From Squalus acanthias (lineage: Eukaryota): a stretch of DNA of 64,000 nt. Below are positions 2,715 through 45,800 of the stretch, one piece after another (the first letter of the stretch is position 1; the number at the start of each line of letters is the position of its first letter). The stretch is from positions 15,376,001-15,440,000 of the forward strand of contig CM059449.1 of NCBI GenBank assembly GCA_030390025.1, given 5' to 3'. The notes beneath the pieces were generated by a model. The model did not search any database. It was not told the origin of the DNA and was given only the letters and a program-made list of their open reading frames with translations. The position numbers and the translations under genes are program-made.

Positions 2715-3578
2715 ATAACAACAGAAAACGCTGGAAAAAGCTCAGCAGGCCAGGCAGCATCCGTAGAGAGAGAAAGAGAGTTGACGTTTCAGGTCGATGA
2801 CCTTTCATCAGAACTGGGAAGAGCTGGAAATCAAATAGATTTAAGGCCAGGGTAAAGCTGGGAAAAGGGGGAGGGGATAAAGGAACAAAGGAGGAGATGA
2901 AGAGACATTAAGAGACATTAAGAGATATGCAAGGCTAGAGGTGGTGTTAATGTGACAGATTAAGGCTGAATGAAGTGTGAAATCCACTGGCAGAATGAAG
3001 GACAGCTGCCAGCTTCTAGGAGGAAAAAAAAAGGTGGGGGGGACAAATAAAAGGGTGGATAAAATAAAATATAAATGTGATTGGAGCTGAGGTTATGATC
3101 TAAAATTGTTGAACTCGATATTGAGTCCAGAGGGCTGTAGCGTGCCTAAACGAAAGATGAGGTGCTGTTCCTCGAGCTTACGCTGAGCTTCCGTGGAACA
3201 GTGTAATAGGCCGAGGACGGTGAGGTCAGAGTGGGAGTGAAGCGGTGAATTAAAGTGACAGGCCACCGGGAGCTCGGGGTCCCCCTTACGGACTGAACGG
3301 AGGTGTTCCGCAAAGCGGTCACCCAATCTGCGTTTGGTCTCCCCAATGTAGAGGAGTCCACATCGTGAGCAGCGAATACAGTATACTAAATTGCAGGAAG
3401 TACAAGTAAATCGCTGTTTCACCTGGAAGGGGTGTTTGGGGCCCTGGACAGTGGGAAGAGGGGAGGTATAAGGGCATGTGTTGCATCTCCTGCGCGTGCA
3501 CGGGAAGGTGCCGGGCGAAGGGGAAGGGGTGCTGGGGGTGGTAGAGGAGTGGACTAGGGTGTCGCGGAGGGACACCCT
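2715..3578 (-). mobile_element. 5'-truncated Penelope-like element (GIY-YIG endonuclease) with 14-bp TSD
   Basis: Uninterrupted ORF segment CNLVYCIRCSRCGLLYIGETKRRLGDRFAEH...GLN. TSD agcccatctgtgtc at 2701-2714 and 3579-3592. Confidence 0.93.
2779..2815 (-). ncRNA. Minimal type I hammerhead ribozyme in Penelope tail
   Basis: Minus strand reads AGTT-CTGATGA-A-AGGTC-ATC-GACCT-GAAA-CGTC-AACT. This gives stem I AGTT/AACT, core CUGAUGA, stem II AGGUC/GACCU, GAAA, palindromic ACGU and a GUC cleavage triplet. Confidence 0.85.
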
Positions 3579-4884
3579 AGCCCATCTGTGTCGTTTGTCA
3601 GATTTCAAAAATTAATCAAAACCTCGAGGTGCTGAAAGAAGCTGCCTTAGAGTTTAAGGTGAGACACCGTGTAAAATAAAATACAAACACAGGTAACAGA
3701 ATCCTGAACAGGGAGCGTTCACAGATTCGGGTTTGAGCGTTTCTCAATACTTAAAGCTCTTTAGATAATGGGTTTGTATTTATTTAATTACTCAGTCCTT
3801 ACACGGACTGCCATTTGTATCACTGCTGAAGGAATCAGGGACAGGAAGTGAGAGTTTCACTTTATTCTAAACACCATTTTAATAGATCAGTGTAAATTGA
3901 TCAGCCCTTGGAATGCAGAGTGAATTCTCTTGTACAGTATGTTATCAGATCGATACCGATCCTGTCTCCGTGACAAGTGATGATCTGTGGAACGTGTCTC
4001 CTATTTATATTCCAGATGTGAAGCGTTTAATGTCGACATGAACATGTTAAACTTCCTCCAAAGCCTCTCGAACAGCGTAAAGTTTCAACAATCTGGTAAA
4101 ACAACAGGGACCAGGAAACAGAAGCAGACCAATTACTCTCGGTATTTTCTTAAAGAATAGCAGAGGCAGATTCAACGGGAAAGCACTTGAGAAGTTAAGG
4201 GGAAAGGGATAGAGTGGAGGAGAAGTAAGGTGAAATAAAACCCCTGTGTGAATGAGGTGACACAGCACACCACCAGAGACCAGATACAGCAAAGAAAACC
4301 CCAGAGAAGTAAAAGGTTAAAATAGGGATAGTGGACAGAAGGAAAATTAAAAGGGAATGCTTGGAACTAAAATAAAGTATAAACTAAAGGGACAACAGGA
4401 GAAATAGAACAAGAAAGGGAAACAGCTGAGAAAATTATAACTAAGATGGAGTCCATGAGGTGTGGTTATTGTGCAATATTCATAAAGGAGAAAGAGGGAT
4501 ACAATACAAAGGTGAAGAGATATGAAAAGTGTCTGTTAATCAGCAGCTTAAAAAGGATTTCTGACCTTCGAGGTGCAGGAACTTACAGGGAGAGAAATCA
4601 AGAGATTTTCTGAGGCTGAGTGGATAGAATTCGATTCAGTCAGTGATAAGGCCAGGATAGGATCAGACCTGGAGAGGGAACCTTCAGGGACTGTAGCTGG
4701 AGACCAGTACAATCAGCAGCAGATTCTCATCATAGAGGGACACGTGCTGAAGGAAGCCAATGATAGGGGAATGCTGGATGGATTGAAGTTATTGAAAGAA
4801 GCCAGAAAGGTCAGAAACCCTGTGAAGCTACTCGAGATTATAATTAGTGAGCAGATACCAGGCTCTGCCCAGTTTTAAATTAAT

Positions 4885-8371: not shown

Positions 8372-8717
8372 GTACATTTGATGTCACTTTGTTGTATATT
8401 TTCCAATCACGATGTGTTTTTCTTTGAACCGTTGAATGTCCATTACCAAAGTAAAATCTCAATTTAGCAAATCATTGAATTAGCACAGACACTTCCCTTG
8501 TGCTGGTGAAACCGGAGTTAAAGAAAATACAGCAGCTCGATCCTCAGTTAGAGCTCCCTCTTCTGAATAAATTATCATCTGGTCCCCATTAACTGGATTT
8601 CACTGCAGCAGAGAATGTTTTTCTCCAAAAGATTCTTGTATGAAGAGAACTGCACAGGCTGCACAACCTTTTTAAAATGCTCATTTGTTTTCTCAATCTC
8701 ACTATTCTTTTCCAAAG

Positions 8718-8951
8718 GACCAAGGCGTAAAGACAGAGAAACAGATTAAAGCAGAATTTGAAAAACTTCACCAGTTTCTCCGTGAGGAAGAGAGGATTGA
8801 GTTGGAAGATCTGAAACTGGAGAAGGAGAAAAACAGTCAGGAGATGAAGGGGAGGATTGAGAAGATAACGGAGGAAATCTCATCGCTTTCAGTCACTGTT
8901 CAGGATATTGAACAAGTGCTGAGTGAACAGGACAGCATCAAGTTTTTAACG
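8718..8951 (+). pseudogene. TRIM exon 3 (234 bp, coiled coil)
   Basis: caaag|GAC...TTAACG|gtagct, translating ...QIKAEFEKLHQFLREEE...IEQVLSEQDSIKFLT. Confidence 0.92.
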
Positions 8952-9039
8952 GTAGCTGTTAATTTATTTGTTTTTTGTTTCCTTCGTCCCTCTTTGACAC
9001 AGTCTTCAAGACCGTGCAGGGTGTGCCATCAAAACCTAG

Positions 9040-10430
9040 AATATTACATTGAATTACAGAGTATTTACAGCACAGAAACAGGCCTTTCGGCCCAACAGGT
9101 CCATGCTGGTGTTTGTGCTCCACACGAGCCTCCTCCCACCCTTCGTAGCCTAAGCCCATCAACATATTCTATTCCTTTCTCCCTCGTGTTTATCTAGCTT
9201 CCCCTTAAATACATTTATACTATTCACCTCAACCACTCCATGTGGTAGCGTGTTCCACGTTCTCACCACTCTCTGGGTAAAGAAGTTTTGTTACGTTAAA
9301 GGCACTATATAAATGTAAGTTGTTGTTGAATTCACTATTGGATTTATTAGTGACTTTCTTGTATTTATGGCCCCTAGTTCTGGTCTCCCCTGCAAGTGGA
9401 AACATCTTCTCTACGTCTATCAAACCCTTTCATAATCTTAAAGACCTCCACCAGGTCACCCCTCAGTCTTCTCTTTTCTAGAGAAAAGAGCCCCAGCCTG
9501 TTCACTCTTTCCTGTTTGGTACAACCTCTCAGTTCTTGTATCATTCTAGTAAATCTTTTGTGCACCTTCTCCAGTGCCTCTATCTTTTTTTTATAATATG
9601 GAGACTAGAACTGTTCCCAGTTCTCCAAGTGTGGTCTAACCAAGGTTCGATACAAGTTTAAGATAACTTCTCTGCTTCGTAATTCTCTAGAAATGAACCC
9701 CAGTGCTTTGTTTGTTTTTATGGCCTTATTAACCTGTGTCACTACTTCTAGTGATTTGTGTATCTGGTATCCCCAGATCCCTCTGTTCCTCTACCCCATT
9801 TAGACTTATTTTCCAAGGAGTATGTGGCCTCCCTTTCTTCCTGCCAAAATGTACCACCTCACACTTTTTATTAATGTCTTTCTGTATTTTATCGCAGTCC
9901 TCCTCAGTATTAACTATATCCCCAATTAGGTGTCATCCGCAAATTTTGAAATTGTAATTCCAATTGCCGAGTCCAAATGGTTTCTGTCAATGGTGAACAA
10001 CAGTGGTCCCAGCACCGATCCTTGTGGAACACAACTTTACACCTTTTGTCAATCTGAGTAACTATTTTTAACCCCTACTCTGTGTTTTCTGTTCTGTAGC
10101 CAGCTTGCTATCCATTTTGCTACTTGTCCCCTGACTCCACATGTTCTGACCTTAGTCACGAGTCTACTATGCGGTACCTTAACAAAGGCCTTTTGGAAAT
10201 CCAAATATGTTCCGTCGACTGAATTCCCCTTGTCTACCCTTTCTGTTACTTCAGAGAATTCAATAAGATTGGTCAAGCATGACCTTCCCTTTTGAAATCA
10301 GTGCTGACTATTCTTCATTATATTTTCAGATTCTAGATGTTTTTCTATTACATCTTTGAGTAAGGATTCCATTATCTTTCCTACTACCGATGTTCAGCTA
10401 ATTGGTCTGTAGTTCGCTGGACTTGTTCTA
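9040..10430 (-). mobile_element. CR1 LINE ORF2 3' part (degenerate), with a short L2-type tail nested at ~9287-9327
   Basis: Minus ORFs contain YLDFQKAF and RLGLFSLEKRRLRGDL. The nested sequence is gttaaaggcactatataaatgtaagttgttgtt. Confidence 0.85.
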
Positions 10431-26024: not shown

Positions 26025-26067
26025 ATGAATCCGAACATGACGATCTGGGCGGCGATAATTGTATCTG
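26025..26067 (+). CDS. NCR3: NCR3/NKp30-like gene A, leader exon
   Basis: ATG AAT CCG AAC ATG ACG ATC TGG GCG GCG ATA ATT GTA TCT G|gtaagg (MNPNMTIWAAIIVS). Phase 1. Resembles the gene B leader (TIW motif, same gtaagg donor). Confidence 0.75.
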
Positions 26068-26237
26068 GTAAGGTGTTTTAACTCGTTTTAATCTATGTTC
26101 AAGCCTATTGTCCACTATTAGATACCAGGAGGACTCCGTGCAATATAATCATGGGAAAGTTCACTCATTTTGGAAAATAGTATAAAAATGACAGCTGGAA
26201 ATATCAGTGGAGGAACGCCAATGTGCTCTCCCGTTCG

Positions 26238-26697
26238 TCCATCACCCCCTGTGCTCGCTGACCGACATTGGCCCCCGGTTAAGCAACGCCTCGATTTTAA
26301 AATTCTCATCCTTGTTTTCAAATCCCTCCATGGCCTCGCTCCTCCCTATCTCTGTAATCTCCTTCAGCCCCGCAACCCTCCGAGATAACTGCAGTCTTCC
26401 AATTCTGTCCTCTTGAGCATCCCCGATTATAATCGCTCCACCATTGGCGGCCGTGCCTTCAGCTGTCTGGGCCCTAAGCTCTGGAATTCCCTGCCTTAAC
26501 CTCTCCGCCTCTCTACCTCTCTTCCTTTAAGACGCTCCTTAAAACCTACCCCTTTGACCAAACTTTTGGTCACCTACCCTAATTTCTCCTTATGTGGCTG
26601 GGTGTCAAATTTTGTCTTCTAACACTCCTGTGAAGGGCCTTGTGACGTTTTATTACATGAAAGGCGCTGTATAAATACAAGTTGGTGTTGTTGTTGC
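26238..26697 (+). mobile_element. L2 LINE 3' end
   Basis: HWPPVKQRLDFKILILVFKSLHGLAPPYL motif. Tail aggcgctgtataaatacaagttggtgttgttg. Confidence 0.85.
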
Positions 26698-27352
26698 TGC
26701 TATTCCATTCCTGTCTGCTATATTTTAAATCGGTATTTTAATACATATACCACAAACGGGTTAACGTCTCCTTTTAAAGTAGAGGACAGAAGGCAGGAAC
26801 GCGGGGACGGCTTATCCCTAAAGTAGCCAACAATAATTTTGGAGCTGTGTTATGTTTAATACCAGATCACATTCTATAACCGCTGTGCCGAAAGGATATT
26901 TCAGGATTTGTTTACCACCATTAGACCGACCCTAAGCGGCACTATTTTCATATTTACAGACTGCAATGTTATAAAACAACGTGTCTGCTCCGCTCCGGCG
27001 TCATAACCGCCCGTGGAATGTATGCTCCGATATCCTTAAACCCCCAAAACTAAATATCAGTAGCATCGTCACTTAAATCTATATGTTTCTCTATGCATTT
27101 CCATTTGAACCTAAATATTTACCAAACGGAGGGATGCTGGCTCTGGTTAGTCATTATCAACATCACTCTAGGGCCAGGGACAGTAGGGTTCGAATGCAGA
27201 GTAAGGCTGTTTTGCCCTAAAGCTGTCTTTGTAAAATCACAACATTTAAAGTACCTAAATAGACTACAGTTCTAACAGCTACCCCATATTTACAACGTTA
27301 ACTCTATACATTCTGATATCCAGAGCATGTTAGATAGCCCGTGTCTGTGTTA

Positions 27353-30050
27353 TCATAGAATCATAGAACCATAGAATGGTTACAGCACAGAAGGTGGACA
27401 TTCGGCCCGTCGAGCCCGTGCCGGCTCACTCATAGAAACATAGAAAATATAGAAACATAGAAAAATAGGGGCAGGAGTAGCCCATTCGGCCGTTCAAGCC
27501 TGCTCCGCCATTCAATATGATCATGGCTGATCCTCTATCTCAATACCATATTCCTGCTCTCTCCCAATACCCCTTGATGCCTTTTGTGTCTAGAAATCTA
27601 TCTATCTCCTTCTTAAATATATTCAGTGACTTGGCCTCCACAGCCTTCTGTGGTAGAGAATTCCACAGGTTCACCACCTTCTGAGTGAAGACATTTCTCC
27701 CCATCTCAGTCCTAAATGTCCTACCCCGTATCCTGAGACTGTGATCCCTCGTTCGAGACCCCCCAGCCAGGGGAAACATCCTCCCTGCATCCAGTCTGTC
27801 TAGCCCTGTCAGAATTGTATACGTTTCAATGAGATTCCCCGTCATTCTTTAAAACTCTAGTGAATACAGGCCTAGTCGACCCAATCTCTCCTCATACGAC
27901 AGTCCTGCCATCCCAGGAGTCTGGTGAACCGTCGCTGCACTCCCTCTATGGCAAGTATATCCTTTCTTAGGTAAGTAGACCAAAACTGCACACAGTACTC
28001 CAGGTGTGGTCTCACCAAGGCCCTGTACAACTGTAGTAAGACATCCTTGCTCCTGTACTCAAATCCTCTTGCAATGAAGGCCAACATACCATTTGCCTTC
28101 CTAACTGCTTGCTGCACCTGCAAGTTTGCTTTCAATGACTGGTGTACAAGGACAGCCTGGAACCTTTGTACATCAACATTTCCCAATCTATCACCATTTA
28201 AATAATACTCTACTTTTCTGTTTTTCCTACCGAAGTAGATAACTTCACATTTATCCACGTTATACTGGATCTATCATGTATTTGCCCACTCACTCAACTT
28301 GTCTAAATCGACTTGAAGCCACTTTGCATCCTCCTCACAACTCACAATCCCACCTAATTTCGTGTTGTCAGCAAACTTGGAAATATTACATTTGGTTCCC
28401 TCATCCAAATCATTGATATATATTGTGAATATCTGGGACCCAAGCACTGATCCCTGCGGTACCCCACTAGTCACCGCCTGCCACCCCGAAAAAGACCCAT
28501 TTGTTCCTACTCTCTGTTTCCTGTCTGTTAACCAATTTTCAATCCATGCCAGTATATTACCCCCAATCCCATGTGCTTTAATTTTGCACACTAACCTCTT
28601 AAGTGGGGCTTTATCAAAGGCCTTCTGAAAATCCAAATACACCACATCCACTGGTTCTCCCTCATCTATTCTATCAGTTACATCCTCAAAAAACTCCAGT
28701 AGGTTTGTTAAACACAATTTCCCTTTCATAATTTCATGTTGACTTTGTCTAATCCCGTTGATATTTTCTAAGTGTCCTGTTAATACATCCTTTATAATAA
28801 ACTCTAGCATTTTCCCTACTATAGATGTTAGGCTAACCGGTCTGTAGTTCCCTGTTTTCTCTATCCCTCCTTTTTTAAATAGTGGGGTTACATTTGCCAC
28901 CCTCCAATCTGCAGGAGCTGTTCCATAATCTATAGAATTTTGGAAGATGACAACCGATGCATCCACTGTTTCCATGGCTACCTCTTTTAGTACTCTGGGA
29001 TGCAGCTTATCAGGCCCTGGGGATTTATCAGCTTTCAGTCCCATTAATTTCTGCAGCACTATTTTTTTTAACTAAAACTAATTTCCTTTAATTCCTCCTT
29101 CTCACTAGACCCTTGGTTTCCTCGCATTTCTGGGAAGTTATTTGTGTCCTCTTCCGTGAAGACAGAACCAAAGTATCTGTTTAATTGATCATCCATTTCC
29201 TTGTTCCCCATTATAAATTCTCCCGTTTCTGGCTGTAAGGGACAAAAGCAGCTCAGCTAGTCCCACTCCCCCGCCCTTTCCCCTTAGCCCTGCAATTTTT
29301 TTTCCTTCAGGCACTTATCCAATTCCCTTTTGAAAGCTTGATTGGCGCTCCATCCACCACCTCAAACATTCACTCCCTCCACCACCGGCGTACTGTGGCT
29401 GCAGTGTGCACCATCTACAAGATGCACTGCAGCAACTCGCCAAGGCTTCTTCGGCAGTACCTCCCAAACCAACGTCCTCAGCAGGCGCATGGGAACAGCA
29501 CCACCTCCAAGTTCCCCTCGAAGTTACACACCATCCTGACTTGGAAGTGTATCGCCATTCCTTCATTGTCGCTGGGTGAACATCCTGGAACTCCCTCCCT
29601 AACAGCACTGTGGGCGTATCTACACAACACGGACTGCAGAGGTTCAAGAAGGTGGCTCACCACCACCTTCGCAAGGGCAATTAGGGAAGGGCAATAAATG
29701 CTGGCCTTGCCAGCAAAGCCCACATCCCATAAATGAATTTTAAAAAATCTGCCTCCACCATCCTTTCAGGCAGTACATTCCAGATCATAACAACTCGCTG
29801 CGTAATTTTTTTTTTCCTCATCTCGCCTTTGTTTTTCTGCCAATCAATTTAAATCTTTGTCCTCTAGTTCTCGACCCTTCTACTAATGGGAACAGTTTCT
29901 ATCTATCTACTCTGTCTAGACCCCTCATGATTTTGAAAAACTCTATCAAATCTCCTCTCAACCTTCTCTGCTCTAAGAAGAACAACCCCAGCTTCTCCAG
30001 TGTATTCACGTAACTGAAGTCCCTCATCCCTGGAACCATTCTTGTAAATC
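27353..30050 (-). mobile_element. Nested cluster: old CR1 3' end (27353-27430, 29244-29337, 29747-30050) interrupted by a CR1 (-, 27431-29243) and a family-B LINE (+, 29338-29746)
   Basis: The host CR1 sequence resumes collinearly after each insert (compare reverse complement of 23500-24010). The inner CR1 carries RT ORFs 28274-29059 and 27872-28258. Confidence 0.82.
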
Positions 30051-30860
30051 TGAATTTAGAGTTCATTTGTCCTGGTAATTTATTAATTATTGTAAAGGTT
30101 TAGTGATGTCAATAACACACAGGGGCGGGTATGCCCCAGGGCCTGCGCCATCGGCCAGAACTTGCGTGCTATCAAACCAAATGGTGGTAAATCCAAAGAT
30201 ACTGAAATGGCAGAGGATTTGGAGGTTAATTGTCCACACCTACTGGCTGGGGTGGAACCCGATGCGGAATATTAATGGAATGTTTTTAGAACAATATTAA
30301 ACAGGTGGAAGTCAGGTAAGTGACCAAAGTCATAAAAAAGGGAGTGTGGTAAGAGAAAAACAAGATGGCTGCCTGGTCAAGTACAAAGGCAAATAAGACA
30401 TAAGTAAAAATGTGTTTTTGAATATAAATTAAAGGCACCTAATGCACAACAAGACAAAGGCAGGTACCGGGACCAGGGTAGAAAAGCCATTAAAACAGCT
30501 AAACGATTAATGGAAAAGCGGATGGTGGACCACTGTAGTAGTCGTGGAAAATGTCATTCATCTATGTGAAGAGTCAAAGGATCGTCAAAGACTATATTGG
30601 GCTTCTGAAAGATTCACAAGAACAGGTTGGAAAGGTCTCTCAGGGTCCGGCGGAGATACTAAATTAATACTTTGCACCAGTCTTCACTCAGACACGGCTA
30701 AATGGCGTTGTTAGCAATAACGTTGTTAATATTGATACCGTTTTAGACTGCAATGGAACTGAATATCAGGCGCTGCATATAACGGGCGGCCGATTTGATA
30801 CCGCCCGTTTTGCGCCACAATCTGAGATGGATTTCTAGGCCAATGAAACAGAATATCAGG

Positions 30861-32880
30861 TAGCAAAAAATATAAAAACAGATAGTAAGAGTTTTTATAG
30901 TTATATAAAAAGAAAAAGGGTGGCTAAAGTAAATGTTGGTCCCTTAGAGGATGAGACCGGGAAATTAATGGTGGGAAATATGGAGATGGCAAAAACACTG
31001 AATGAATATTTTGTATCAGTCTTTACAGTAGAGGACACTAAGAATATCCCAACACTGGACAAACAGGGGGCTATAGGGGGAGAGGAGCTAAACACGATCA
31101 AAATCACTAAGGAAGTGGTACTCGGTAAAATAATGGGACTCAAGGCGGATAAATCACCTGGACCTGATGGCTTACATCCTAGAGTCTTGAAGGAAGTGGC
31201 GGTAGGGATTGTAGATGCATTGGTAATAATTTTTCAAAACTCCCTGGATTCCGCTAAGGTCCCGGCAGACTGGAAAACTGCTAATGTAACACCCTTATTT
31301 AAAAAGGGCAGTAGACAGAAGGCTGGTAACTATAGACCGGTTAGCCTAACATCTGTGGTAGGTAAAATTTTGGAGTCCATTATTAAGGAAACAGTAACAG
31401 GACATTTGGATAATCATAATTTAATAGGACAAAGTCAGCATGGTTTTACGAAGGGGAAGTCATGTTTGACAAATTTGCTGGAGTTCTTTGAGGAAGTAAC
31501 ATATAGAGTGGATAAAGGGGAACCAGTGGACGTAGTGTATTTAGACTTCCAAAAGGCATTTGACAAGGTGCCACACAAAAGATTATTGCTTAAGGTAAAA
31601 AATCACGGAATTGGGGGTAATATTCTGGCATGGATAGAGGATTGGCTATCTAACAGAAAGCAAAGAGTTGGGATAAATGGTTCATTCTCAGACTGGCAAT
31701 CAGTAACTAGTGGTGTTCCACAGGGGTCAGTGCTGGGTCCCCAACTCTTCACAATCTATATTAACGATTTGGAGGAAGGGACCAAGTGTAACATATCAAA
31801 ATTTGCAGATGATACAAAGATGGGAGGGAAAGTAGTGAATGAGGAGGACATAAAAAACCTGCAAGGGGACATAGACAGGCTAAGTAAGTGGGCAGAGATT
31901 TGGCAGATGGAATACAACACTGGAAAGTGTGAGGTGATGCACTTTGGCAGGAAAAATCCTAGAGCAATTTATTATCTTAATGGCAAGAAACTGGAGAGTA
32001 CTGAAGTGCAAAGGGATCTGGGGGTCCTGGTGCACGAAACTCAAAAGGTTAGTATGCAGGTGCAGCAAGTGATTAAGAAGGCAAATGGAATGTTGGCTTT
32101 CATTGCTAGGGGGATAGAATATAAAAATAGGGAGGTATTGCTTCAGTTGTACAAGGTATTGGTGAGACCGCACCTGGAATACTGCATACAGTTTTGGTGT
32201 CCTTACTTAAGGAAAGACATCCTTGCTCTCGAGGCAGTGCAAAAAAGGTTCATTCGGTTAATCCCGGGGATGAGGGGGTGGTCATATGAGGAGAGGTTGG
32301 GTAGATTGGGACTCTACTCATTGGAGTTCAGAAGAATGAGAGGCGATCTTATTGAAACATATAAGATTGTGAAGGGGTTGGATCGGGTGGATGCGGGGAG
32401 GATGTTCCCGATGACGGGTGAGACGAGAACTAGGGGACATAGTCTTAGAATAAGGGGCTGCTCTTTCAAAACTGAGATGAGGAGGAACTACTTCACTCAG
32501 AGGGTGGTAGGTCCATGGAATATGCTGCCACAAAAAGCTGTAGAAGCTACAACATTAATTAAATTTAAAACAGAAATAGACAGTTTCCTAGAAGTAAAGG
32601 GCATTAAGGGTTACGGGGAGCGGGCAGGAATTTGGACATGAGTCTAGGTTCGGATCGGTCATGGCCCTGTGGGTAGTGGAGCGGGCCCAGGGACTGTGTA
32701 GCCTGATTCTGCTCCTATTTCGTGTGTGCAATTCTGTTAGATGCAGGAGATGGTTCTGTGATAGATAGTAGATTGGCGGTTAGGATGAGATCAGCCATGA
32801 TCTTATTGAATGGCGGAGCAGGCTCGAGGGGCCGATTGGCCTACTCCTGCTCCTATTTCTTATGTTCTTATGTTCTTATG
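30861..32880 (+). mobile_element. Young 5'-truncated CR1 LINE with uninterrupted 573-aa RT ORF
   Basis: ORF 30920-32641 contains [29 protein letters not shown] and FADD. Tail (ttcttatg)n. Absent from the paralogous site at ~35600. Confidence 0.95.
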
Positions 32881-33018
32881 ATGGCCGATTTGATACCGCC
32901 CGCTTTGCGTTGCCGCCCAAGATGAATTTCTAGCAACGCGTTTCCCATATTTCTGTTTTTATTTCAGATTTTTATCATTGGAGGTTTTTTTTAAAGTCAG
33001 ATATTTTCTATTTTATAG

Positions 33019-33360
33019 CAAGACAAACTTTTGGAAACATCACAGTGATCCAAAGCCCAGCCTCGATTATTACAACTGAGGGCGAGTCTGTGGTCCTAAA
33101 CTGCACGTATAATGGGCCAACCGGGATAGCCGCATACAAATGGTATCGAAACAGCCAAGGTGGGACTGAAGTGTCCAACAAAACATCACAGTACACAGGA
33201 CGTGTGATTCTACCGGATCAGAAGGCCTTCTTAGCAAGCAAAGACGCTTCACTACAAATAGCAGACACAAAGCTGTACGATTCAGGAACCTATTATTGCA
33301 AAGTGGAACACGTGGCATGTGGGGAAGCATATGGCCCGGGGACAAAACTTACTGTAATAA
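33019..33360 (+). CDS. NCR3: NCR3/NKp30-like gene A, VJ-type Ig exon copy 1
   Basis: ttatag|CA...ATA A|gtgagt, 342 bp, phase 1-1. V-set hallmarks LNC, W, DSGTYYC and germline J-like GPGTKLTV. EVSNKTSQYTGRV aligns by eye to NKp30 EVRNGTPEFRGRL. Confidence 0.88.
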
Positions 33361-33489
33361 GTGAGTATCGCTCCCTAGTTTTGGCGAAACAATTTGTAAG
33401 TGTGAAAGTGACCCCGATCATAATGAAATGCATGATTACACCCAGGTCTTTTTAATTGGAAATAGCTTTGTGATTTTTAAATAGAAAAG

Positions 33490-33838
33490 AAAAAGAAAGA
33501 CTTGCATTTATATAGCGCCTTTCACGACCACCAGACGTCCCAAAGTGCTTTACAGCCAATGAAGTACTTTTTTTTTGAAGCGGAGTCACTGTTGTATTGT
33601 AGGAAACGCGGCAGCCAATTTGCGCACGGCAAGCTCCCACAAACAGCAATGTGATAATGATCAGGTAATCTGTTTTAGTGATGTTGATTGAGGGATAAAT
33701 ATTGGCTCAGGACACCGGGAAGAACTCCCCTGCTCTTCTTCGAAATAGTGCCATGGGATCTTTTACGTCCACCTGAGAGAGCAGACGGGGCCTCGGTTTA
33801 ACATCTCATCCGAAAGACGGCACCTCCGACAGTACAGC
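33490..33838 (-). mobile_element. Deu-type SINE truncated at the tandem-duplication junction
   Basis: Same as 36215-36565 but lacks the tRNA head and is fused at 33838/33839 to a family-B LINE. Confidence 0.82.
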
Positions 33839-36565
33839 TGGACCAGCCACATAATTACTGTGGCAACAAGAGCAGGTCAGAGGCTAGGTATTCTGCGGCG
33901 AGTGTCTCACCTCCTGACAACCCAAAGCCTTTCTACCATCTGCAGGGCACAAGTAAGGAGTGTGATGGAATACTCTCCACTTGCCTGGATGAGTGCAGCT
34001 CCAACAACACTCAAGAAGCTCGACACCATCCAAGACAATGCAGCCCGCTTGATTGGCACCCTATCCACCTCCTTAAACATTCACTCCCTCCACCACCGGC
34101 ATACCGTGGCTGCAGTGTGTACTATCGACAAGATGCACTGCAGCAACTCGTCAAGGCTTCTTCAGCAGCACCTCCCAAACCCACGTCCTCCTCCACCTAG
34201 AAGGGCAAGGGCAGCAAGCGCATGGGAACACCACCAGCTCCAAGTTCCCCTCCAAGTTACACACCATCCTGATTTGGAAGTATATCGCCATTCCTTCATT
34301 GTCGCTGGGTCAAACTCCCGGAACTCCCTCCCTAACAGCACTGTGGGAGTATCTACACCACACGGACTGCAGCGGTTCAAGTAGGCGGCTCACCACTACC
34401 TTCGCAAGGGCAATTAGGGATGGGCAATAATGTAGGCCTTGCCAGCAATGCCCACATCCATCCCATAAATTAATTTAAAAAAATCTGCCTCCACCACCAT
34501 TTCAGGCAGTACATTGCAGATCATAACAACTCGCTGCATAAAAAAGTTTTTCCTCATGTCGCCTTTGGTTCTCCTGCCAATCAACTTAAATCTGTGTCCT
34601 CTGGTTCTCGACCATTCCGCCAATGGAACAGTTTCTATCTATCTACTCTGTCTAGACCCCTCATGATTTTGAACAACTCTTATCAAATTTCCTCTCAACC
34701 TTCTCTGCTCTAAGGAGAACAATCCCAGCTTCTCCAGTCTATCCATGTAACTGAAGTCCCTCATCCCTGGAACCATTCTTCTAAATCTGAATTTAGAACC
34801 AGTTCATTTGTCCTGGTAATTTATTAATTATTGTAAAGGTTTAGTGATGTCAATAACACACAGCGGGCGGGTATGTCCCAGGGCCTGCGCCACCGGCCAG
34901 CCCTTGCGTGCTATCAAACCAAATGGTGGTAAAACCAAAGATACTGAAATGGCAGAGGATTTGGAGGTTAATTGTCCAAACCTACTGGCTGGGGTGGAAA
35001 CCGATGCGGAATATAAATGGAATGTTTTTAGAACAATGTTAAACAAGTGGAAGTCAGGTAAGTGACCAAAGTCAAAAAAAGGGAGTGTGGTAAGAGAAAA
35101 ACAAGATGGCTGCCTGGTCAAGTACAAAGACAAATAAGACGTAAATAAAAATGTGTTTTTGAATATAAATTAAAGGCACCTAATGCACAACAAGACAAAG
35201 GCAGGTACCGGGACCAGGGTAGAAAAGCCATTAAAACAGCTAAACGATTAATGGAAAAGCGGATGGTGGACCACTGTAGTAGTCGTGGAAAATGTCATTC
35301 ATCTATGTGAAGAGTCAGAGGATCGTCAAAGACTCTATTGGGCTTCTGAAAGATTCACAAGAACAGGTTAGAAAGGTCTCTCAGGGTCCGGCGGAATACT
35401 AAATTAATACTTTGCACCAGTCTTCACTCAGACACGGCTAAATGGCGTTGTTAGCAATAACGTTTTATAATATTGATACCGTTTTAGACTGCAATGGAAC
35501 TGAATATCAGGCGCTGCATATAACGGGCGGCCGATCCGATACCGCCCGTTTTGCGCCACAATCTGAGATGGATTTCTCGGCCAATGAAACAGAATATCAG
35601 GTGCTGATGGCCGATTTGATACCGCCCGCTTTGCGTTGCCGCCCAGGATGAATTTCTAGCAACGCGTTTCCCATATTTCTGTTTTTATTTCAGATTTTTA
35701 TCATTGGAGGTTTTTTTTAAAGTCAGATATTTTCTATTTTATAGCAGGACAAACTTTTGGAAACATCACAGTGATCCAAAGCCCAGCCTCGATTATTACA
35801 ACTGAAGGCGAGACTGTGGTCCTAAACTGCACGTATAATGGACCAACCGGGATAGCCGCATACAAATGGTATCGAAACAGCCATGGTGGGACTGAAGTGT
35901 CCAACAAAACATCACAGTACACAGGACGTGTGATTCTACCGGATCAGAAGGCCTTCTTAGCAAGCAAAGACGCTTCACTACAAATAGCAGACACAAAGCT
36001 GTACGATTCAGGAACCTATTATTGCAAAGTGGAACACGTGGCATGTGGGGAAGGATATGGCCCGGGGACAAAACTTACTGTAACAAGTGAGTATCGCTCC
36101 CTAGTTTTGGCGAAACAATTTGTAAGTGTGAAAGTGACCGCGATCATAATGAAATGCATGATTACACCCAGGTCTTTTTAATTGGAAATAGCTTTGTGAT
36201 TTTTAAATAGAAAAGAAAAAGAGAGACTTGCATTTATATAGTGCCTTTCACGACCACCGGACGTCCCAAAGTGCTTTACAGCCAATGAAGTACTTTTTTT
36301 TTGAAGCGGAGTCACTGTTGTATTGTAGGAAACGCGGCAGCCAATTTGCGCACAGCAAGCTCCCACAAACAGCAATGTGATAATGATCAGGTAATCTGTT
36401 TTAGTGATGTTGATTGAGGGATAAATATTGGCCCAGGACACCAGGGAGAACGCCCCTGCTCTTCTTTGAAATAGTGCTATTGGATCTTCTATGTCCACCT
36501 GAGAGAGCAGACGGGGTCCTCGGTTTAACATCGCATCCGAAAGACGGTACCTCCGACAGTGCAGC
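33839..36565 (+). repeat. Tandem segmental duplication unit (~2.73 kb): LINE-B fragment, CR1 fragment, unique intron, V exon, SINE
   Basis: Collinear with 29338-33838 once the 2020-bp CR1 is removed. V-exon offset is 2726 bp. Confidence 0.92.
35745..36086 (+). CDS. NCR3: NCR3/NKp30-like gene A, VJ-type Ig exon copy 2
   Basis: ttatag|CA GGA...ACA A|gtgagt, 342 bp, phase 1-1, open. Seven substitutions versus copy 1. Confidence 0.88.
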
Positions 36566-36690
36566 GCTCCCTCAGTACTGCACTGAAGTGTCAGCCTAGA
36601 TATTTGTGCTGAAGTCTCTAGAGTGGGAATATGAACCCGCAATTTTCTGACTCAGAGGTAAGGGTGCTACCAACTGAGCCACTGGCTGAC
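36215..36690 (-). mobile_element. Full-length Deu-type tRNA SINE
   Basis: Head gtcagccagtggctcagttggtagc on the minus strand, with core and tail present. Confidence 0.85.
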
Positions 36691-38049
36691 CTAAAATGCT
36701 AAAACTATTTGTTATGCCAACACCTACAGTGCAGAAGCGTCCCAACATCGGACTGAGGAAGATGGAAGACGGGATGAATTAAGCAGTATTGAAGGACTAC
36801 TTCCAAGCTTGGGCTTTAACAGTCTGTCGATTGTAGGGGAAAATGGACTGGATGGAGTGAGCAGTTCCTCATTTGTAACGTCTTGCATAGGAATGAGGTG
36901 GATTAGGGCACTATGGATGGAGATTTGATTTCAACGCAGTTACAATGGAGGGAAGAGCCATGGCTGATAGGCAGACGTGCTTGGAGCTTAGAAGAAAGAA
37001 GGAGAAAGTTAATCACCATGGCAGTCGAGATAAATATAAAATAAAGTTGGAAAGTAGAGAGAGGTGTTAGAGGCCATTGTGGGGATGGGGTAGGTGAAGA
37101 ATGGCGTATCTGACGACAAGCTTCTTGCATGTTAAATTGTTCATCTGCAGAAAGAAATGTGCCAGTAAAGCGGCGGACAGGGAACCGCAGAGGAAATCCA
37201 CATTAGTGTTGATATCATGCAGACATGCGGCGCAGGGTTCGGATCACTTTGCAGATTGACAAGGGATTACCAAGAAAAAGGAATATTACAACTACCTTGA
37301 GTTAAAACATAGATCATGGGAACCGGTGAACTAGAGCAATGTTAGGAAGCAAACGAGAGTTAGAAAAAGCGCGAGACTTGCAAGCAGCGACAGTTAACTA
37401 AATAAGTACTTTATTGGCTTAGAGAAAGAAATGAGCTAAAAATAGCGTTTATATAACCTCATGACGTTGATCAGAAACGGCTCAAAGCGCCTCACGCCCG
37501 ATGAGTAACTGAGAAGTGCAGTGGTTGCTGTGACGTAGGGACACCCTGCAGCCAATCTGCGCACAGCAAAAAAAAACCCGAACTGCGATGAGATGGGACT
37601 TTTGCCATTGGCTGAGGAAGGCTAGGAACCTCCTTCTAATCGAGCAGTGCTACAACCAGGCAGTGAATCAAGGCAATGCCCCTAGTGTAGGGCCTTCATG
37701 TTCAATGTCTCATCCCAAGGATAACACCTGCGACAGTGCACCTCGCCTTGATTACCACATGCCAGTGTAAACCCACATAATATCCTTCCGTTCCGATGTT
37801 TTGGCCCAAACATTCATGACTCGGAGGCAAGCTGACAAATAGAACAACTGACAAATGGACAGCAATGCGATTTCTGGGGAATGAACAAAGAAAATAGCTC
37901 TTTCAAGTCTTCAAGTTAAATTAATTATACGAACTTCATTATCGTTTTTTCAAACAGTGCGAGTTCGATATTCACCAAATCACAGAAATGACAGAGAAGC
38001 ATGGCTTGTAGAAGTACAAAGAATAATTATTTTTTTCAAATCTCCTCAG

Positions 38050-38163
38050 CTCGAGGATACGCCACGAGGAACTCGCGGATTCTTTGGTACATCAGAACGT
38101 GGATAATGGTTGCACTGATCCTTACGGGGATCGTCCTCTCTCAGCGCATCTGCCCCATCAGAG
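38050..38163 (+). CDS. NCR3: NCR3-like gene A, stalk/transmembrane exon with intramembrane Arg
   Basis: ctcctcag|CT CGA...AGA G|gtactg, translating RGYATRNSRILWYIRTWIMVALILTGIVLSQRICPIR. Phase 1-1. Confidence 0.82.
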
Positions 38164-38349
38164 GTACTGACATTGAAGTTAAATTTACAGCATTTCACAT
38201 ACATAAAAGATGAAATCATAGAATTGCACTTGCAATGCGCACATCCTCATTTTATATATAAGTATTGATTACAGAAGTAGATGCTTTCAGAATATCAAAC
38301 TATGTCTTAAATTCAGTTTAATCTTTTTTTTCTCTCTTTCTACTGTCAG

Positions 38350-38383
38350 TTCATTGCACATTTGGCCCACTTCCAGAGTCAAG
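38350..38383 (+). CDS. NCR3: NCR3-like gene A, cytoplasmic mini-exon
   Basis: Long pyrimidine tract + cag|TTCATTGC...TCAAG|gttggt, translating VHCTFGPLPESR. Phase 1 to 2 fits both neighbours. Confidence 0.55.
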
Positions 38384-38485
38384 GTTGGTAAATGGAAACA
38401 TTACCGATTTTAAGTGAAGTCTATTTCGTCCCTGAAACACTTGCAAGTGATTAATTTATCTTCTTCTGGTTTTTTTCCCCGGAAG

Positions 38486-38528
38486 GGTCGAGTCCATCTA
38501 CGAAGACATTGATTTTACTGGTGGGTGA
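38486..38528 (+). CDS. NCR3: NCR3-like gene A, cytoplasmic exon with tyrosine motif
   Basis: ttttcccccggaag-type acceptor, then G GTC GAG TCC ATC TAC GAA GAC ATT GAT TTT ACT G (VESIYEDIDFT). Followed by either donor gtgggt at 38521 or read-through to TGA at 38526-38528. Confidence 0.55.
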
Positions 38529-42879: not shown

Positions 42880-45800
42880 AAGAGTGGTGTGGGAGGAAGG
42901 GGTTTCAGTTCATGGGGCACTGGCACCGGTACTGGGGAAAGAGGGAGCTGTTCCGTTGGGACGGGCTCCACTCAAACCGGGCTGGGACCAGTGTCCCAGC
43001 GAACTGAATAACTAGGGCAGTAGACAGGGCTTTAAACTAATGAAGGGGGGAGGTGGGGGGGGGGGGGTGCGGGAGGATTCAGGAAAGAGTACATTTAAAA
43101 GCAGTGAGAGAAATGTCAAGGTTCTAGAGCAGAGTAGAGTTTTGGGTAAAAATAATCAGAGTGGGTCAGGAAAGGGCAGAGAGAGTGACAAAGGTAATAA
43201 GGCATCAGTGACTAAGATGACATCAGGGAAAAAGAGAAATAAGTCAAAGGTGAAGGCACTATATCTGAATGCGCAAAGCATTTGCAACAAAATAGATGAA
43301 TTAATAGCGCAGATAGAAATTAACAGGTTTGATCTGATAGCCATAATGGAGACGTGGTTTCAAAGTGGCCAAGGTTGGGAACTAAATATTCCAGGATACT
43401 TAACTTTTAGAAAGGATAGTCAAAACGGAAAAGGAGGAGGGGTAGCCCTGATATTAAAGGATGGAATAAAGACAGTAGAGAGAAAGTATCTTAGCTCTGA
43501 AAATCAAGAAGTAGAATCAGTTTGGGTGGAGCTAAACAACAGCAAGGGGCAGCAAACATTGTTGGGAATTGTTTATAGGCCCCCAAGCAATAGTTGTAAT
43601 GTAGGGCAGAGTATAAATCAGGAAGTTGTAGGCACATGTAACAAGGGTAATACAGTAATCATGGGCGACTTTGATCTAAATATAGAGTGGGCAAACCGAA
43701 TTTGCAGTAATAGTGTGGAGGACGATTTCATGGAATGTATGCAAGATAGTTTTCTAGATCAGTATGTTAAGGAACCAACTAGGGAAGAGGCTATTTTAGG
43801 TCTAGTATTGTGCAACGAGCAAGGGTTAATTAATAACCTTGTCGTAAAGGGGCCTTTAGGGAAGAGTGACCATAATAGGGTAGAATTTTATAGTGAGTTT
43901 GAAAGTGACTTAGTTAAATCCGAAACTAGTGTCTTAAATCAAACAAGGCAAACTACATAGGTATGAGGGGCGAGTTGGCTAAGGTAGATTGGGAAACTAC
44001 ATTAAAATGTATGACTGTGGACGAGCAATGGCTAGCATTTAAAGAATTAATACATAATTTACAACAGATATACATTCCTTTAAGGCACAAAAACCCCACA
44101 GGAAAAGTGGTCCAACCGTGGCTAACAAGAGAATTTAAAGATAGTATTAGATCAAAGGAAGAGGCTTATAATGCTGCCAAAAAGAATAGTAAGCCTGAGG
44201 ATTGGGAGGATTTTAGAATTCAGCAAAGGAGGACCAAGAAATTGATACAGAAAGGGAAATTAGAATATGGGAGTAAACTAGCGAGAGACATAAAAATAGA
44301 CTGTAAAAACTTCTATAAGTAAGTAAAAGGAAAAGATTAGCGAAAGTAAATGTGGGTCTCTTACAGGCTGAGACAGGAGAAATTATAATGGGGAATAAGG
44401 AAATGGCAGGGAAATTAAACAAATACAAGTGTCTGTCTTCATGGAAGAAGACACAAACAATTTCCTGGAAATAGTAGAAAACCAAACGTCTAGCGAGAAT
44501 GAGGAACTGAAAGATATTAGTATTAATAAAAATGTAGTACTGGAGGAATTAATGGGACTGAAAGCCGATAAATCCCTTGGACCTGATGGCCTACATTCTA
44601 GGGTTTTGAAAGAGTTGGCTATAGAGGTAGTGGATGAATTGGTTGTCATTTTCTGAAATTCCATAGATTCTAGAACGGTTCCTGCGGATTGGAAGGTAGG
44701 AAATGTAACCACACTATTTAAGAAAGGTGGGAGAGAGAAAATAGGGAACTACAGACCAGTTAGCCTGACATCAGTAGTAGGGAAAATGCTAGAATCTATT
44801 ATTAAAGACGTGGTAATAGGGCACTTAGAAAATAATAATAGGATTGGGCAGAGTCAACACGGATTTATGAAAGGGAAATCGTGTTTGAGAAATTTATTAG
44901 AGTTTTTTGAGGTTGTAACTAGCAGACTAGATAAGGTGGGACCAGTGGACGTGGTTAATTTGGATTATCAGAAGGCATTCAATAAGGTGCAACACAAGAG
45001 GTTATAAACAAAATTAGGGCTCATGGGATTGGCGGTAATATACAAGGATGGACTGAGAATTGGTTAACGGACAGAAAACAGAGTAGGAATAAACGGGTCA
45101 TTTTCGGGTTCGCAAGCTGTAACTAGTGGGGTACCGCAAGGATCAATGCTTGGGCCTCAGCTATTCACAATCTACATCAATGATTTGGATGAGGGGACCA
45201 AATGTAATATATCAAAGTTTGCTGATGACACAAAGCTGGGCGGGAATGTAAGTAATGAGAAGGATGCAAGGAAGCTTCAAGGGGATATAGTCAGGTTAAA
45301 TGAATGGGCAAGAACATGACAAATGGAATATAATGTTGAGAAATGTGAAGTTATCCACTTTGGTAGGAAAAACAGAAAAGCAGAGTATTTTTTATATGGT
45401 GAGAGATTGGGAAATGTTGGTGTTCAGAGGGACCAGGATGTCCGTGTACAAGAAAGTTAACATGCAGGTACAGCATGAAACTAAGAAAGCAAATGTCGGC
45501 CGTTATTACACGAGGATTTGAGTATAAGAGTAAAGACCTCTTTCTGCAATTATATAGGGCCCTGGTGAGGCCAGACCTGGAGTATTGTGTACAGTTTTCG
45601 TCTCCTTACCTAAGAAAGGATATACTTGCCATACAGGGAATGCAACGAAGGTTCACCAGACTCGTTCCTGGGTCGGTGGGATTGTCCTATGAGGACAGAT
45701 TGAGTTGACTAGGCCTATATTCTCTGGAGGTGATCTCACTGAAACATACAACATTCTTACAGGGCTTGACAGGGTAGAACGAGGGATGGATGTTTCCCCT

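What the first reader, a model, noticed from the sequence alone, without database searches (positions are those of the whole stretch)
26025..38528. NKp30-like receptor gene with two tandem, intact V exons sharing one leader and one TM exon
Seen: one leader (26025-26067), two open 342-bp VJ exons (33019-33360, 35745-36086), both phase 1-1 with canonical splice sites, then a single TM exon (38050). I see no second leader or TM between them. Known: mammalian NKp30 has a single V domain. Inference: the locus can encode L-V1-V2-TM (a two-domain, possibly bivalent NKp30) or choose V1 or V2 by alternative splicing. Either would be RAG-independent diversification of an NK receptor at the exon level.
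Basis: partly seen in the sequence, partly recalled or inferred. Interest (0 to 1): 0.85.

Follow-up and report, generated by a model that had tools for sequence, protein, structure and literature searches.

The report
Duplicated V exon in shark NKp30-like gene
A shark-type immune receptor gene of the NKp30 family carries a recent in-gene copy of its binding-domain exon, an arrangement that gene models of many fishes and amphibians also show, and whether both copies are used in the RNA is still untested.

Summary
One leader exon (26025-26067), two open 342-nt VJ exons (33019-33360, 35745-36086; phase 1-1, AG/GT sites) and one TM exon (38050-38163) lie on the + strand, and I found no second leader or TM between them. 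The V exons are V-set domains. Their best solved relative is human NKp30.

They sit in a ~2.5-kb tandem duplication, about 2% diverged in its unique core. A LINE inserted later into copy A. The 7 exon differences (5 replacement, 2 silent) look neutral, with dN/dS 0.79, and both copies would stay open by chance about 73% of the time.

No RNA evidence could be obtained.

Public gene models of sharks, rays, bichir, newts and frogs include NKp30-like proteins with 2-5 V domains in series. All 3 Heterodontus isoforms keep all three V domains. A two-domain L-V1-V2-TM product is therefore the most likely reading, and the architecture is not unique.

First-stage notes report similar multi-V genes elsewhere in this genome; these notes are unchecked. 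Interest is modest.

The parts
26025..26067 (+). Leader exon (14 codons plus 1 base, phase 1), donor CTG|GTAAGG
   Evidence: It resembles the leader of the neighbouring minus-strand family member (MN...TIW..., donor G|GTAAGG). No other copy in the window.
29336..33838 (+). Duplication copy A, interrupted by a LINE
   Evidence: Self-blastn: 29336-30861 matches 34047-35602 (92.2%) and 32879-33838 matches 35605-36565 (97.3%). Divergence profile.
30862..32878 (+). 5'-truncated LINE inserted in copy A only, sense strand. It holds a 573-aa open RT ORF (30920-32641) and ends 140 nt before the V1 acceptor.
   Evidence: Absent at the matching site of copy B. Pfam RVT_1 E 3.3e-31.
33019..33360 (+). V1: VJ-type V-set exon, 342 nt, phase 1-1
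   Evidence: Pfam V-set 2e-14. Best PDB hit is human NKp30, 5.5e-13. J-like YGPGTKLTV lies within the same exon.
33839..34046 (.). 208-nt spacer between the two copies, made of high-copy repeat
   Evidence: Not part of the A/B alignment. Depth bins 33400-34799 are of the order of 1e5 in run X2.
34047..36565 (+). Duplication copy B, without the LINE
35745..36086 (+). V2: VJ-type V-set exon, 342 nt, phase 1-1. Differs from V1 by 7 nt and 5 aa.
38050..38163 (+). Short stalk plus TM exon, with an Arg in the N-terminal part of the hydrophobic stretch (WYIRTWIMVALILTGIVL)
38350..38383 (+). Probable cytoplasmic micro-exon (phase 1 to 2)
   Evidence: Read, translated. Splice sites AG/GT. Not supported by RNA.
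38486..38528 (+). Probable last coding exon with ITIM-like SIYEDI and a stop at 38526-38528. An alternative donor at 38521 cannot be excluded.

Best explanation
This is a member of the elasmobranch NCR3 (NKp30) receptor family. A ~2.5-kb piece of intron plus the single VJ exon was duplicated in tandem inside the gene. The duplication is recent (about 2% divergence in the unique core), and a LINE was later inserted into the upstream copy.

Both V exons keep the same acceptor region and the same GTGAGT donor, and both are phase 1-1. Ordinary exon definition should therefore splice them in series. The predicted product is a type I membrane protein: leader, V1, V2, short stalk, TM with an Arg, and a short tail with an ITIM-like SIYEDI.

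Shown: the exon anatomy, the duplication, the family assignment, and the existence of multi-V relatives in other species.

Inferred: that both exons are included in the mRNA; that the TM Arg pairs with an ITAM adaptor as in human NKp30; and that the tail motif is inhibitory.

The two V domains are near-identical. Any functional gain would be valency or reach, not new specificity.
For: - Anatomy.
- Only one leader and one TM.
- Duplication. The unique core has 33 mismatches in 1560 columns (2.1%); the repeat-derived edges have 75 in 961 (7.8%). The LINE is in copy A only.
- Family: Pfam V-set. The top 4 of 3033 PDB matches are human NKp30. The Phe equivalent to human F85 is at least 90% conserved in a 35-row family alignment. 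The neighbouring minus-strand V exon is 73% identical to nurse-shark NCR3.
- Relatives: all 9 representatives with E <= 1e-30 have 2-6 matched V stretches. Six models have 2-3 V domains followed by a TM, four of them with a signal peptide, and none of the 17 V-V junctions examined has a hydrophobic segment. 3 of 3 Heterodontus isoforms keep all three V domains and differ only in the tail.
- Age of the architecture: membrane-proximal and membrane-distal V domains of Heterodontus and Scyliorhinus models, and of two Mobula models, group by position (98/93*, 100/99*, 100/100*). Some multi-V architectures are therefore old and maintained.
- The predicted V1-V2 linker is as short as those of the relatives.
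Against: - No RNA evidence at all. The three runs guessed to be RNA have zero depth on V1, V2 and TM, and hold only repeats.
- The gene's own product is not in the protein collections searched.
- All multi-V relatives are genome-derived predictions seen on one contig each. At least one (P0003) looks like a read-through fusion of two complete genes.
- The 7 exon differences are neutral in pattern, and intactness is expected by chance in about 73% of simulations. Nothing therefore shows selection on both copies.
- In another individual (X2), nothing was laid on V1 at 98% or more. The single 710-nt contig on V2 is a V1/V2 mosaic, so copy number there is unresolved.
Confidence: 0.55

Rival explanations
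1. The duplication is real, but only one V exon is used and the other is constitutively skipped. The product is then an ordinary single-V NKp30-like receptor, and the second exon is a young, neutral, possibly copy-number-polymorphic passenger.
For: The substitution pattern is neutral, and intactness is expected by chance. A sense-strand LINE ends 140 nt upstream of V1. The V1 donor has T and V2 has C at position -3. X2 shows no separate V1 contig at 98% or more. A precedent is recalled from memory and was not checked: an in-frame Ig exon skipped in some human KIR2D genes.
Against: The acceptor regions are identical and both donors are GTGAGT. Related models include all their V exons.
Confidence: 0.2
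2. Alternative choice: transcripts carry either V1 or V2, giving two receptor variants from one gene.
For: Phase 1-1 symmetry allows any combination. First-stage notes describe other one-leader, many-V genes in this genome (unchecked).
Against: I saw no sequence feature that would enforce exclusivity. The V1-V2 intron is 2384 nt, so there is no steric block. The variants would differ by only 5 residues, none at positions aligned to validated human contact residues. The Heterodontus isoforms vary in the tail, not in V usage.
Confidence: 0.15
3. Assembly artefact: two haplotypes of a single V exon region were placed in tandem.
For: Individuals differ by about 1.4% just downstream (24 substitutions and 9 gap letters over 36661-38399), which is not far from the 2% between the copies. 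X2 shows one mosaic V contig. No read spanning the junction could be examined.
Against: There are no N or gap in the window. The flanks outside the two copies differ on both sides, and a 208-nt spacer separates them. The edges are 6-12% diverged and one copy holds a 2-kb LINE. In X2 the region 34801-36235 is broken into short contigs (141-178 nt, plus one of 710 nt), those up to 35355 overlapping by 30 nt, and carries an alternating mix of copy-A and copy-B letters at depth 10.4 against 6-10.5 beside it. That is what a collapsed two-copy graph would give.
Confidence: 0.07
4. Two separate genes, each V with its own leader or TM that I did not recognise.
For: Leaders are short and hard to detect. 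One 'two-V' database model (P0003) is really two genes fused.
Against: The 4 candidate leader ORFs between V1 and V2 have poor donors and no likeness to either family leader in the window. No TM-like or tail-like sequence lies between them, at either protein or DNA level.
Confidence: 0.03

Closest known systems
Human NKp30 (NCR3; PDB 3NOI, 3PV6)
   Same: It has a V-type Ig domain with a J-like G-x-G-T motif in a single exon, and it is the best solved-structure match (E 5.5e-13). The Phe-Leu of helix alpha2 that binds B7-H6 aligns to F-L here. It has an Arg at the TM; its role in CD3-zeta pairing is recalled, not checked. The exon order is leader / V / TM.
   Different: The human gene has one V exon; this gene has two. 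Identity is only about 30%. The tail here carries an ITIM-like SIYEDI. Ligand and adaptor are untested.
Shark NCR3 family (Kinlein et al. 2021, Immunogenetics 73:333; nurse-shark NCR3, protein P0025)
   Same: Same family and same type of host. The minus-strand neighbour in this window is 73% identical to P0025 and groups with it at 100/100*. V1/V2 fall in the same elasmobranch clade, but with weak support (80/82).
   Different: V1/V2 are only about 46-48% identical to P0025 and form their own branch. I could not read the paper. I saw only its citation, so whether it describes multi-V members is unknown to me.
Multi-V NKp30-like gene models in public annotation. Examples: Chiloscyllium XP_043533794 (V-V-TM), Heterodontus XP_067865773 (3 V), Mobula XP_062903898 (5 V) and XP_062903900 (2 V), and Xenopus tropicalis A0A803JGU9 'NCR3' (2 V).
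   Same: Signal peptide, 2-5 VJ domains joined directly by short linkers, then a TM. In 7 of 12 such proteins the V domains are each other's closest relatives, so they arose by in-gene exon duplication as here.
   Different: These are predictions under varied names (SIRP-beta-like, pIgR-like, turtle-like). Most duplicates are older than the 2% seen here.
Domain-number variation by exon duplication or skipping in other Ig-type immune receptors (KIR, LILR, CEACAM, pIgR) - recalled, not tested
   Same: Symmetric phase-1 Ig exons allow gain, loss or skipping of whole domains without breaking the frame.
   Different: Different families. These are mostly C2- or I-type domains, not VJ-type.

Membership tests
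NCR3 / NKp30 family | Non-rearranging VJ-type V-set domain: V and a J-like (F/Y)GxGTxLxV motif in one exon | tested here: met
   Pfam V-set 2e-14 and 1.6e-14. YGPGTKLTV lies inside each 342-nt exon. The motif is as quoted in PMC11599192 (passage seen).
NCR3 / NKp30 family | Closer to NKp30 than to other V-set proteins | tested here: met
   The top 4 of 3033 PDB matches are NKp30 (5.5e-13 to 1.1e-12), and the next is a TCR at 2e-11, so the margin is small. Database relatives include proteins named NCR3 or NCR3-like in Ginglymostoma, Heterodontus, Scyliorhinus and Stegostoma.
NCR3 / NKp30 family | Helix-alpha2 Phe/Leu used by human NKp30 to bind B7-H6 | tested here: met
   Human RFL aligns to AFL in V1 and V2. 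The contact residues are named in PMC3135353 (passages seen). F70 is at least 90% conserved in 35 rows.
NCR3 / NKp30 family | Basic residue in or at the TM for adaptor pairing | tested here: met
   There is an Arg in WYIRTWIMVALIL, and the neighbouring gene's TM has one too. Pairing itself is not testable here.
NCR3 / NKp30 family | Single Ig domain in the ectodomain (mammalian definition) | tested here: inconclusive
   There are two V exons in the gene, and their usage in RNA is unknown.
NCR3 / NKp30 family | Linkage to the MHC (class III region) | not testable with these tools
   No MHC marker gene was seen among the 10 of 37 ORFs of 110 aa or more that I scanned. First-stage notes place the cluster in the shark MHC, unchecked.
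NCR3 / NKp30 family | Binds a B7H6-type ligand | not testable with these tools
   Needs a binding assay.
Multi-V NKp30-like receptors (annotation-level group) | Two or more same-strand VJ exons between one leader and one TM, in-frame when joined | tested here: met
Multi-V NKp30-like receptors (annotation-level group) | V exons co-included in one mRNA | not testable with these tools
   No RNA run covers the exons. The joined model was not searched, by rule.

The most novel reading that the evidence does not exclude
Elasmobranch NCR3-family genes use in-gene arrays of VJ exons as a cassette system. Single cells or cell types would choose among V exons (here V1 or V2; four in another gene noted by the scan), producing germline-encoded receptor variety from one promoter and one signalling module. 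This would occur in the MHC-linked, non-rearranging VJ family regarded as close to the ancestor of antigen receptors. Exchange between the V copies by gene conversion (low-divergence core, mosaic letters in a second individual) would keep feeding variation into the array.
Probability: 0.1. Interest if true: 0.75.

Novelty: new member of a known kind. Interest (0 to 1): 0.3.

Why it matters
NKp30 is one of the few NK receptors conserved from sharks to humans, and its VJ domain is used in arguments about the origin of antigen receptors. This locus by itself is a young, apparently neutral exon duplication.

Its value is as a fresh example of a process that the comparison here suggests is recurrent in the family. 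In 7 of 12 multi-V models the domains are within-gene duplicates, while in 4 of 12 the positions are conserved between species or genes. This suggests that two-or-more-V NKp30-like receptors are a normal and sometimes long-maintained form outside mammals, although they are annotated under misleading names.

That pattern, rather than this single gene, would merit an RNA-level check.

Tried and rejected
- **RNA evidence.** My one sequencing-run run used kind 'any' on a 6-kb stretch. No listed holder is on record as RNA, and the tool itself notes that kind 'rna' on one gene looks further. This choice may have cost me RNA runs. The three 'RNA?' runs I laid (X19, X20, X21) cover only repeats.
- **Likeness threshold.** I set min_likeness to 98 to keep V1 and V2 apart. 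This may have dropped a diverged V1 contig of X2.
- **Own gene product.** A search with V2 alone found nothing. A search with a profile of P0004, V1 and V2 found only other species' proteins.
- **Hidden leader or TM.** ORF scans, peptide scans and DNA scans were all negative.
- **Selection test.** It is uninformative with only 7 differences.
- **Literature.** Six searches found no paper in the held library that describes multi-V NKp30. The key primary papers were not held: Kinlein 2021, Flajnik 2012 and Ohta & Flajnik 2015. I therefore cannot say the architecture is unpublished. Supplements were not consulted.
- **Many X2 'joints' from about 32870 to 33492.** I rejected them as low-complexity matches, because the matching sides are only 20-25 letters.
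- **Unequal crossing-over between flanking repeats as the origin of the duplication.** I considered it, but the self-comparison shows no overlap between the left and right repeat pieces, so the mechanism is left open.


Full report
**What is there**

On the + strand I confirm five elements:

- A leader exon at 26025-26067: ATG, 14 codons plus one base, donor CTG|GTAAGG.
- Two 342-nt exons at 33019-33360 and 35745-36086. Each has an AG acceptor, a GTGAGT donor and phase 1-1, and each gives 113 open codons.
- A stalk/TM exon at 38050-38163.
- Two probable tail exons at 38350-38383 and 38486-38528. The second ends in ...SIYEDIDFTGG-stop.

The window has no N.

A tblastn of the V translations on the whole window finds only three V-like exons. 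These are the two above (E 1e-72 to each other) and a third on the minus strand (E 2e-31). Everything else has E >= 1.9.

**Is there a hidden leader or TM?**

I scanned for phase-1 ATG-to-GT ORFs with a hydrophobic core. This gave 13 rows upstream of V1 and 4 rows between V1 and V2. Only 26025 has a consensus donor.

The minus-strand neighbour has a similar leader at 56200-56149 (MN...TIW..., donor G|GTAAGG), which supports the leader call. Searches with both leaders found no further copy. Peptide and DNA searches with the TM exon and the tail found no copy between the V exons. The only other TM-like hit, 53354-53280, belongs to the minus-strand gene.

**The duplication**

Self-blastn shows two matching segments:

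- 29336-30861 matches 34047-35602 at 92.2%.
- 32879-33838 matches 35605-36565 at 97.3%.

Copy A is interrupted at 30862-32878 by a sense-strand LINE fragment. It has an open 573-aa reverse-transcriptase ORF (RVT_1 3.3e-31) and is absent from copy B. It was therefore inserted after the duplication, and it ends 140 nt upstream of the V1 acceptor.

Divergence is uneven:

| Part | Mismatches | Divergence |
|---|---|---|
| Unique core around the exon | 33 in 1560 columns | 2.1% |
| Edges | 75 in 961 columns | 7.8% |

The edges coincide with high-copy repeats, where depth is of the order of 1e5 in run X2. Either the repeats decay faster, or the core has been homogenised by gene conversion.

The exons differ at 7 sites, 5 replacement and 2 silent. 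dN/dS is 0.79, not different from neutral (P 0.68). In simulation, a copy stays open after 7 random changes in 73% of trials. Intactness of both exons is therefore not evidence that both are used.

**Family**

- Both exons are V-set domains (2e-14 and 1.6e-14).
- Of 3033 PDB matches, the top four are human NKp30 (5.5e-13 to 1.1e-12), narrowly ahead of a TCR at 2e-11.
- The J-like YGPGTKLTV sits in the same exon, which is the VJ type (motif quoted in PMC11599192, passage seen).
- The human contact residues named in PMC3135353 are I50, G51, S52, V53, F85, L86, E111 and L113 (passages seen). They align to positions that are identical in V1 and V2, and the F-L pair is conserved. That Phe is at least 90% conserved in a 35-row alignment.
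- The minus-strand V exon is 73% identical to a nurse-shark NCR3 protein and groups with it at 100/100*.
- Best hits are all elasmobranch. This agrees with the scan's notes that this is a cartilaginous fish with a large NKp30-like cluster (unchecked).

**Exon usage**

No direct evidence was obtainable. No run on record as RNA holds the stretch. The three guessed RNA runs have zero depth on V1, V2 and TM.

DNA run X2 comes from another sample and study, so I take it to be another individual. It gives one 710-nt contig on V2 with 13 differences. Of the 10 differences listed, 6 are the V1 letter and 4 are new, while 4 other V1/V2 differences keep the V2 letter. Upstream contigs show the same mix.

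The alternating pattern, the contigs up to 35355 overlapping by 30 nt, and a depth of 10.4 against 6-10.5 beside it all fit a collapsed two-copy graph. They do not exclude a single hybrid exon in that animal.

**Relatives**

HMMER against 1.84 billion representatives gave 989 hits at E <= 1e-3. All 9 hits at E <= 1e-30 have 2-6 V stretches. Named examples:

| Species | V stretches or layout |
|---|---|
| Mobula | 5 V and 2 V |
| Heterodontus | 3 V |
| Chiloscyllium | V-V-TM |
| Scyliorhinus | 2 V |
| Pristiophorus | 2 V |
| Polypterus | 2 V |
| Lissotriton, Pleurodeles | 2 V |
| Bombina, Leptodactylus | 3 V |
| Mixophyes | 2 V |
| Xenopus tropicalis ('NCR3') | 2 V |

Acipenser and Protopterus models each showed 2 matched stretches. 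My local re-mapping gave only one V domain for each.

- The 17 V-V junctions I printed are direct, with short linkers and no leader-like segment.
- All 3 Heterodontus isoforms keep all three V domains.
- In a tree of 42 V domains, 7 of 12 multi-V proteins have their domains as an exclusive clade, which indicates in-gene duplication.
- In 4 of 12, the domains group by position across species or genes.
- One of 12 (P0003) is a fusion of two different genes.
- All of these are genome-derived models seen on one contig each.

**Verdict**

The most likely product is a two-V receptor, but this is inferred from splice-site equality and from relatives, not from RNA.

The duplication is young and looks neutral, and the architecture is common in non-mammalian annotation. 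The locus is therefore an ordinary new member, not a new principle.

Noticed in passing
window 56200-53280, minus strand: A second, single-V NCR3-family gene. It has a leader at 56200-56149, a 342-nt V exon at about 54792-54451 and a TM-like exon around 53354-53280 with an Arg. Its V is 73% identical to nurse-shark NCR3 and groups with it and a Scyliorhinus model.
   Followed up: partly
window 38050-38528: The same gene combines an Arg in the TM (activating-type feature) with an ITIM-like SIYEDI close to the C-terminus. An alternative donor at 38521 could extend the tail into further micro-exons.
   Followed up: partly
window 33019-33360 and 35745-36086: Each V domain has a third Cys in the FG (CDR3-like) loop (VACGE), besides the canonical pair. 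This unpaired Cys could make inter-domain or inter-chain disulfides.
   Followed up: no
window 29336-36565: Divergence between the two copies is about 2% in the unique core but 6-12% in the repeat-derived edges. This is compatible with gene conversion around the V exon.
   Followed up: partly
window 34801-36235 (run X2): Another individual's contigs carry an alternating mix of copy-A and copy-B letters plus private variants. Just downstream (36661-38399) the individuals differ by about 1.4%.
   Followed up: partly
window 27546-29246 (minus), 30862-32878 (plus), 43040-43960 (plus): LINE fragments. Two have reverse-transcriptase ORFs (RVT_1 1.8e-22 and 3.3e-31) and one has an endonuclease ORF. 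The one at 30920-32641 still has a 573-aa open ORF.
   Followed up: partly
window 8685-9197 (plus) and 3093-3608 (minus): There are weak Pfam hits to a TRIM coiled-coil (23.8 bits, below the 30-bit cut-off) and to a GIY-YIG nuclease. The GIY-YIG hit suggests a Penelope-like element, which is my recall.
   Followed up: no
protein P0003 (Scyliorhinus canicula XP_038671257): This public model reads V-TM-tail followed by a second V-TM. Its two V domains belong to different clades, so it is probably a read-through fusion of two neighbouring NCR3-like genes.
   Followed up: partly
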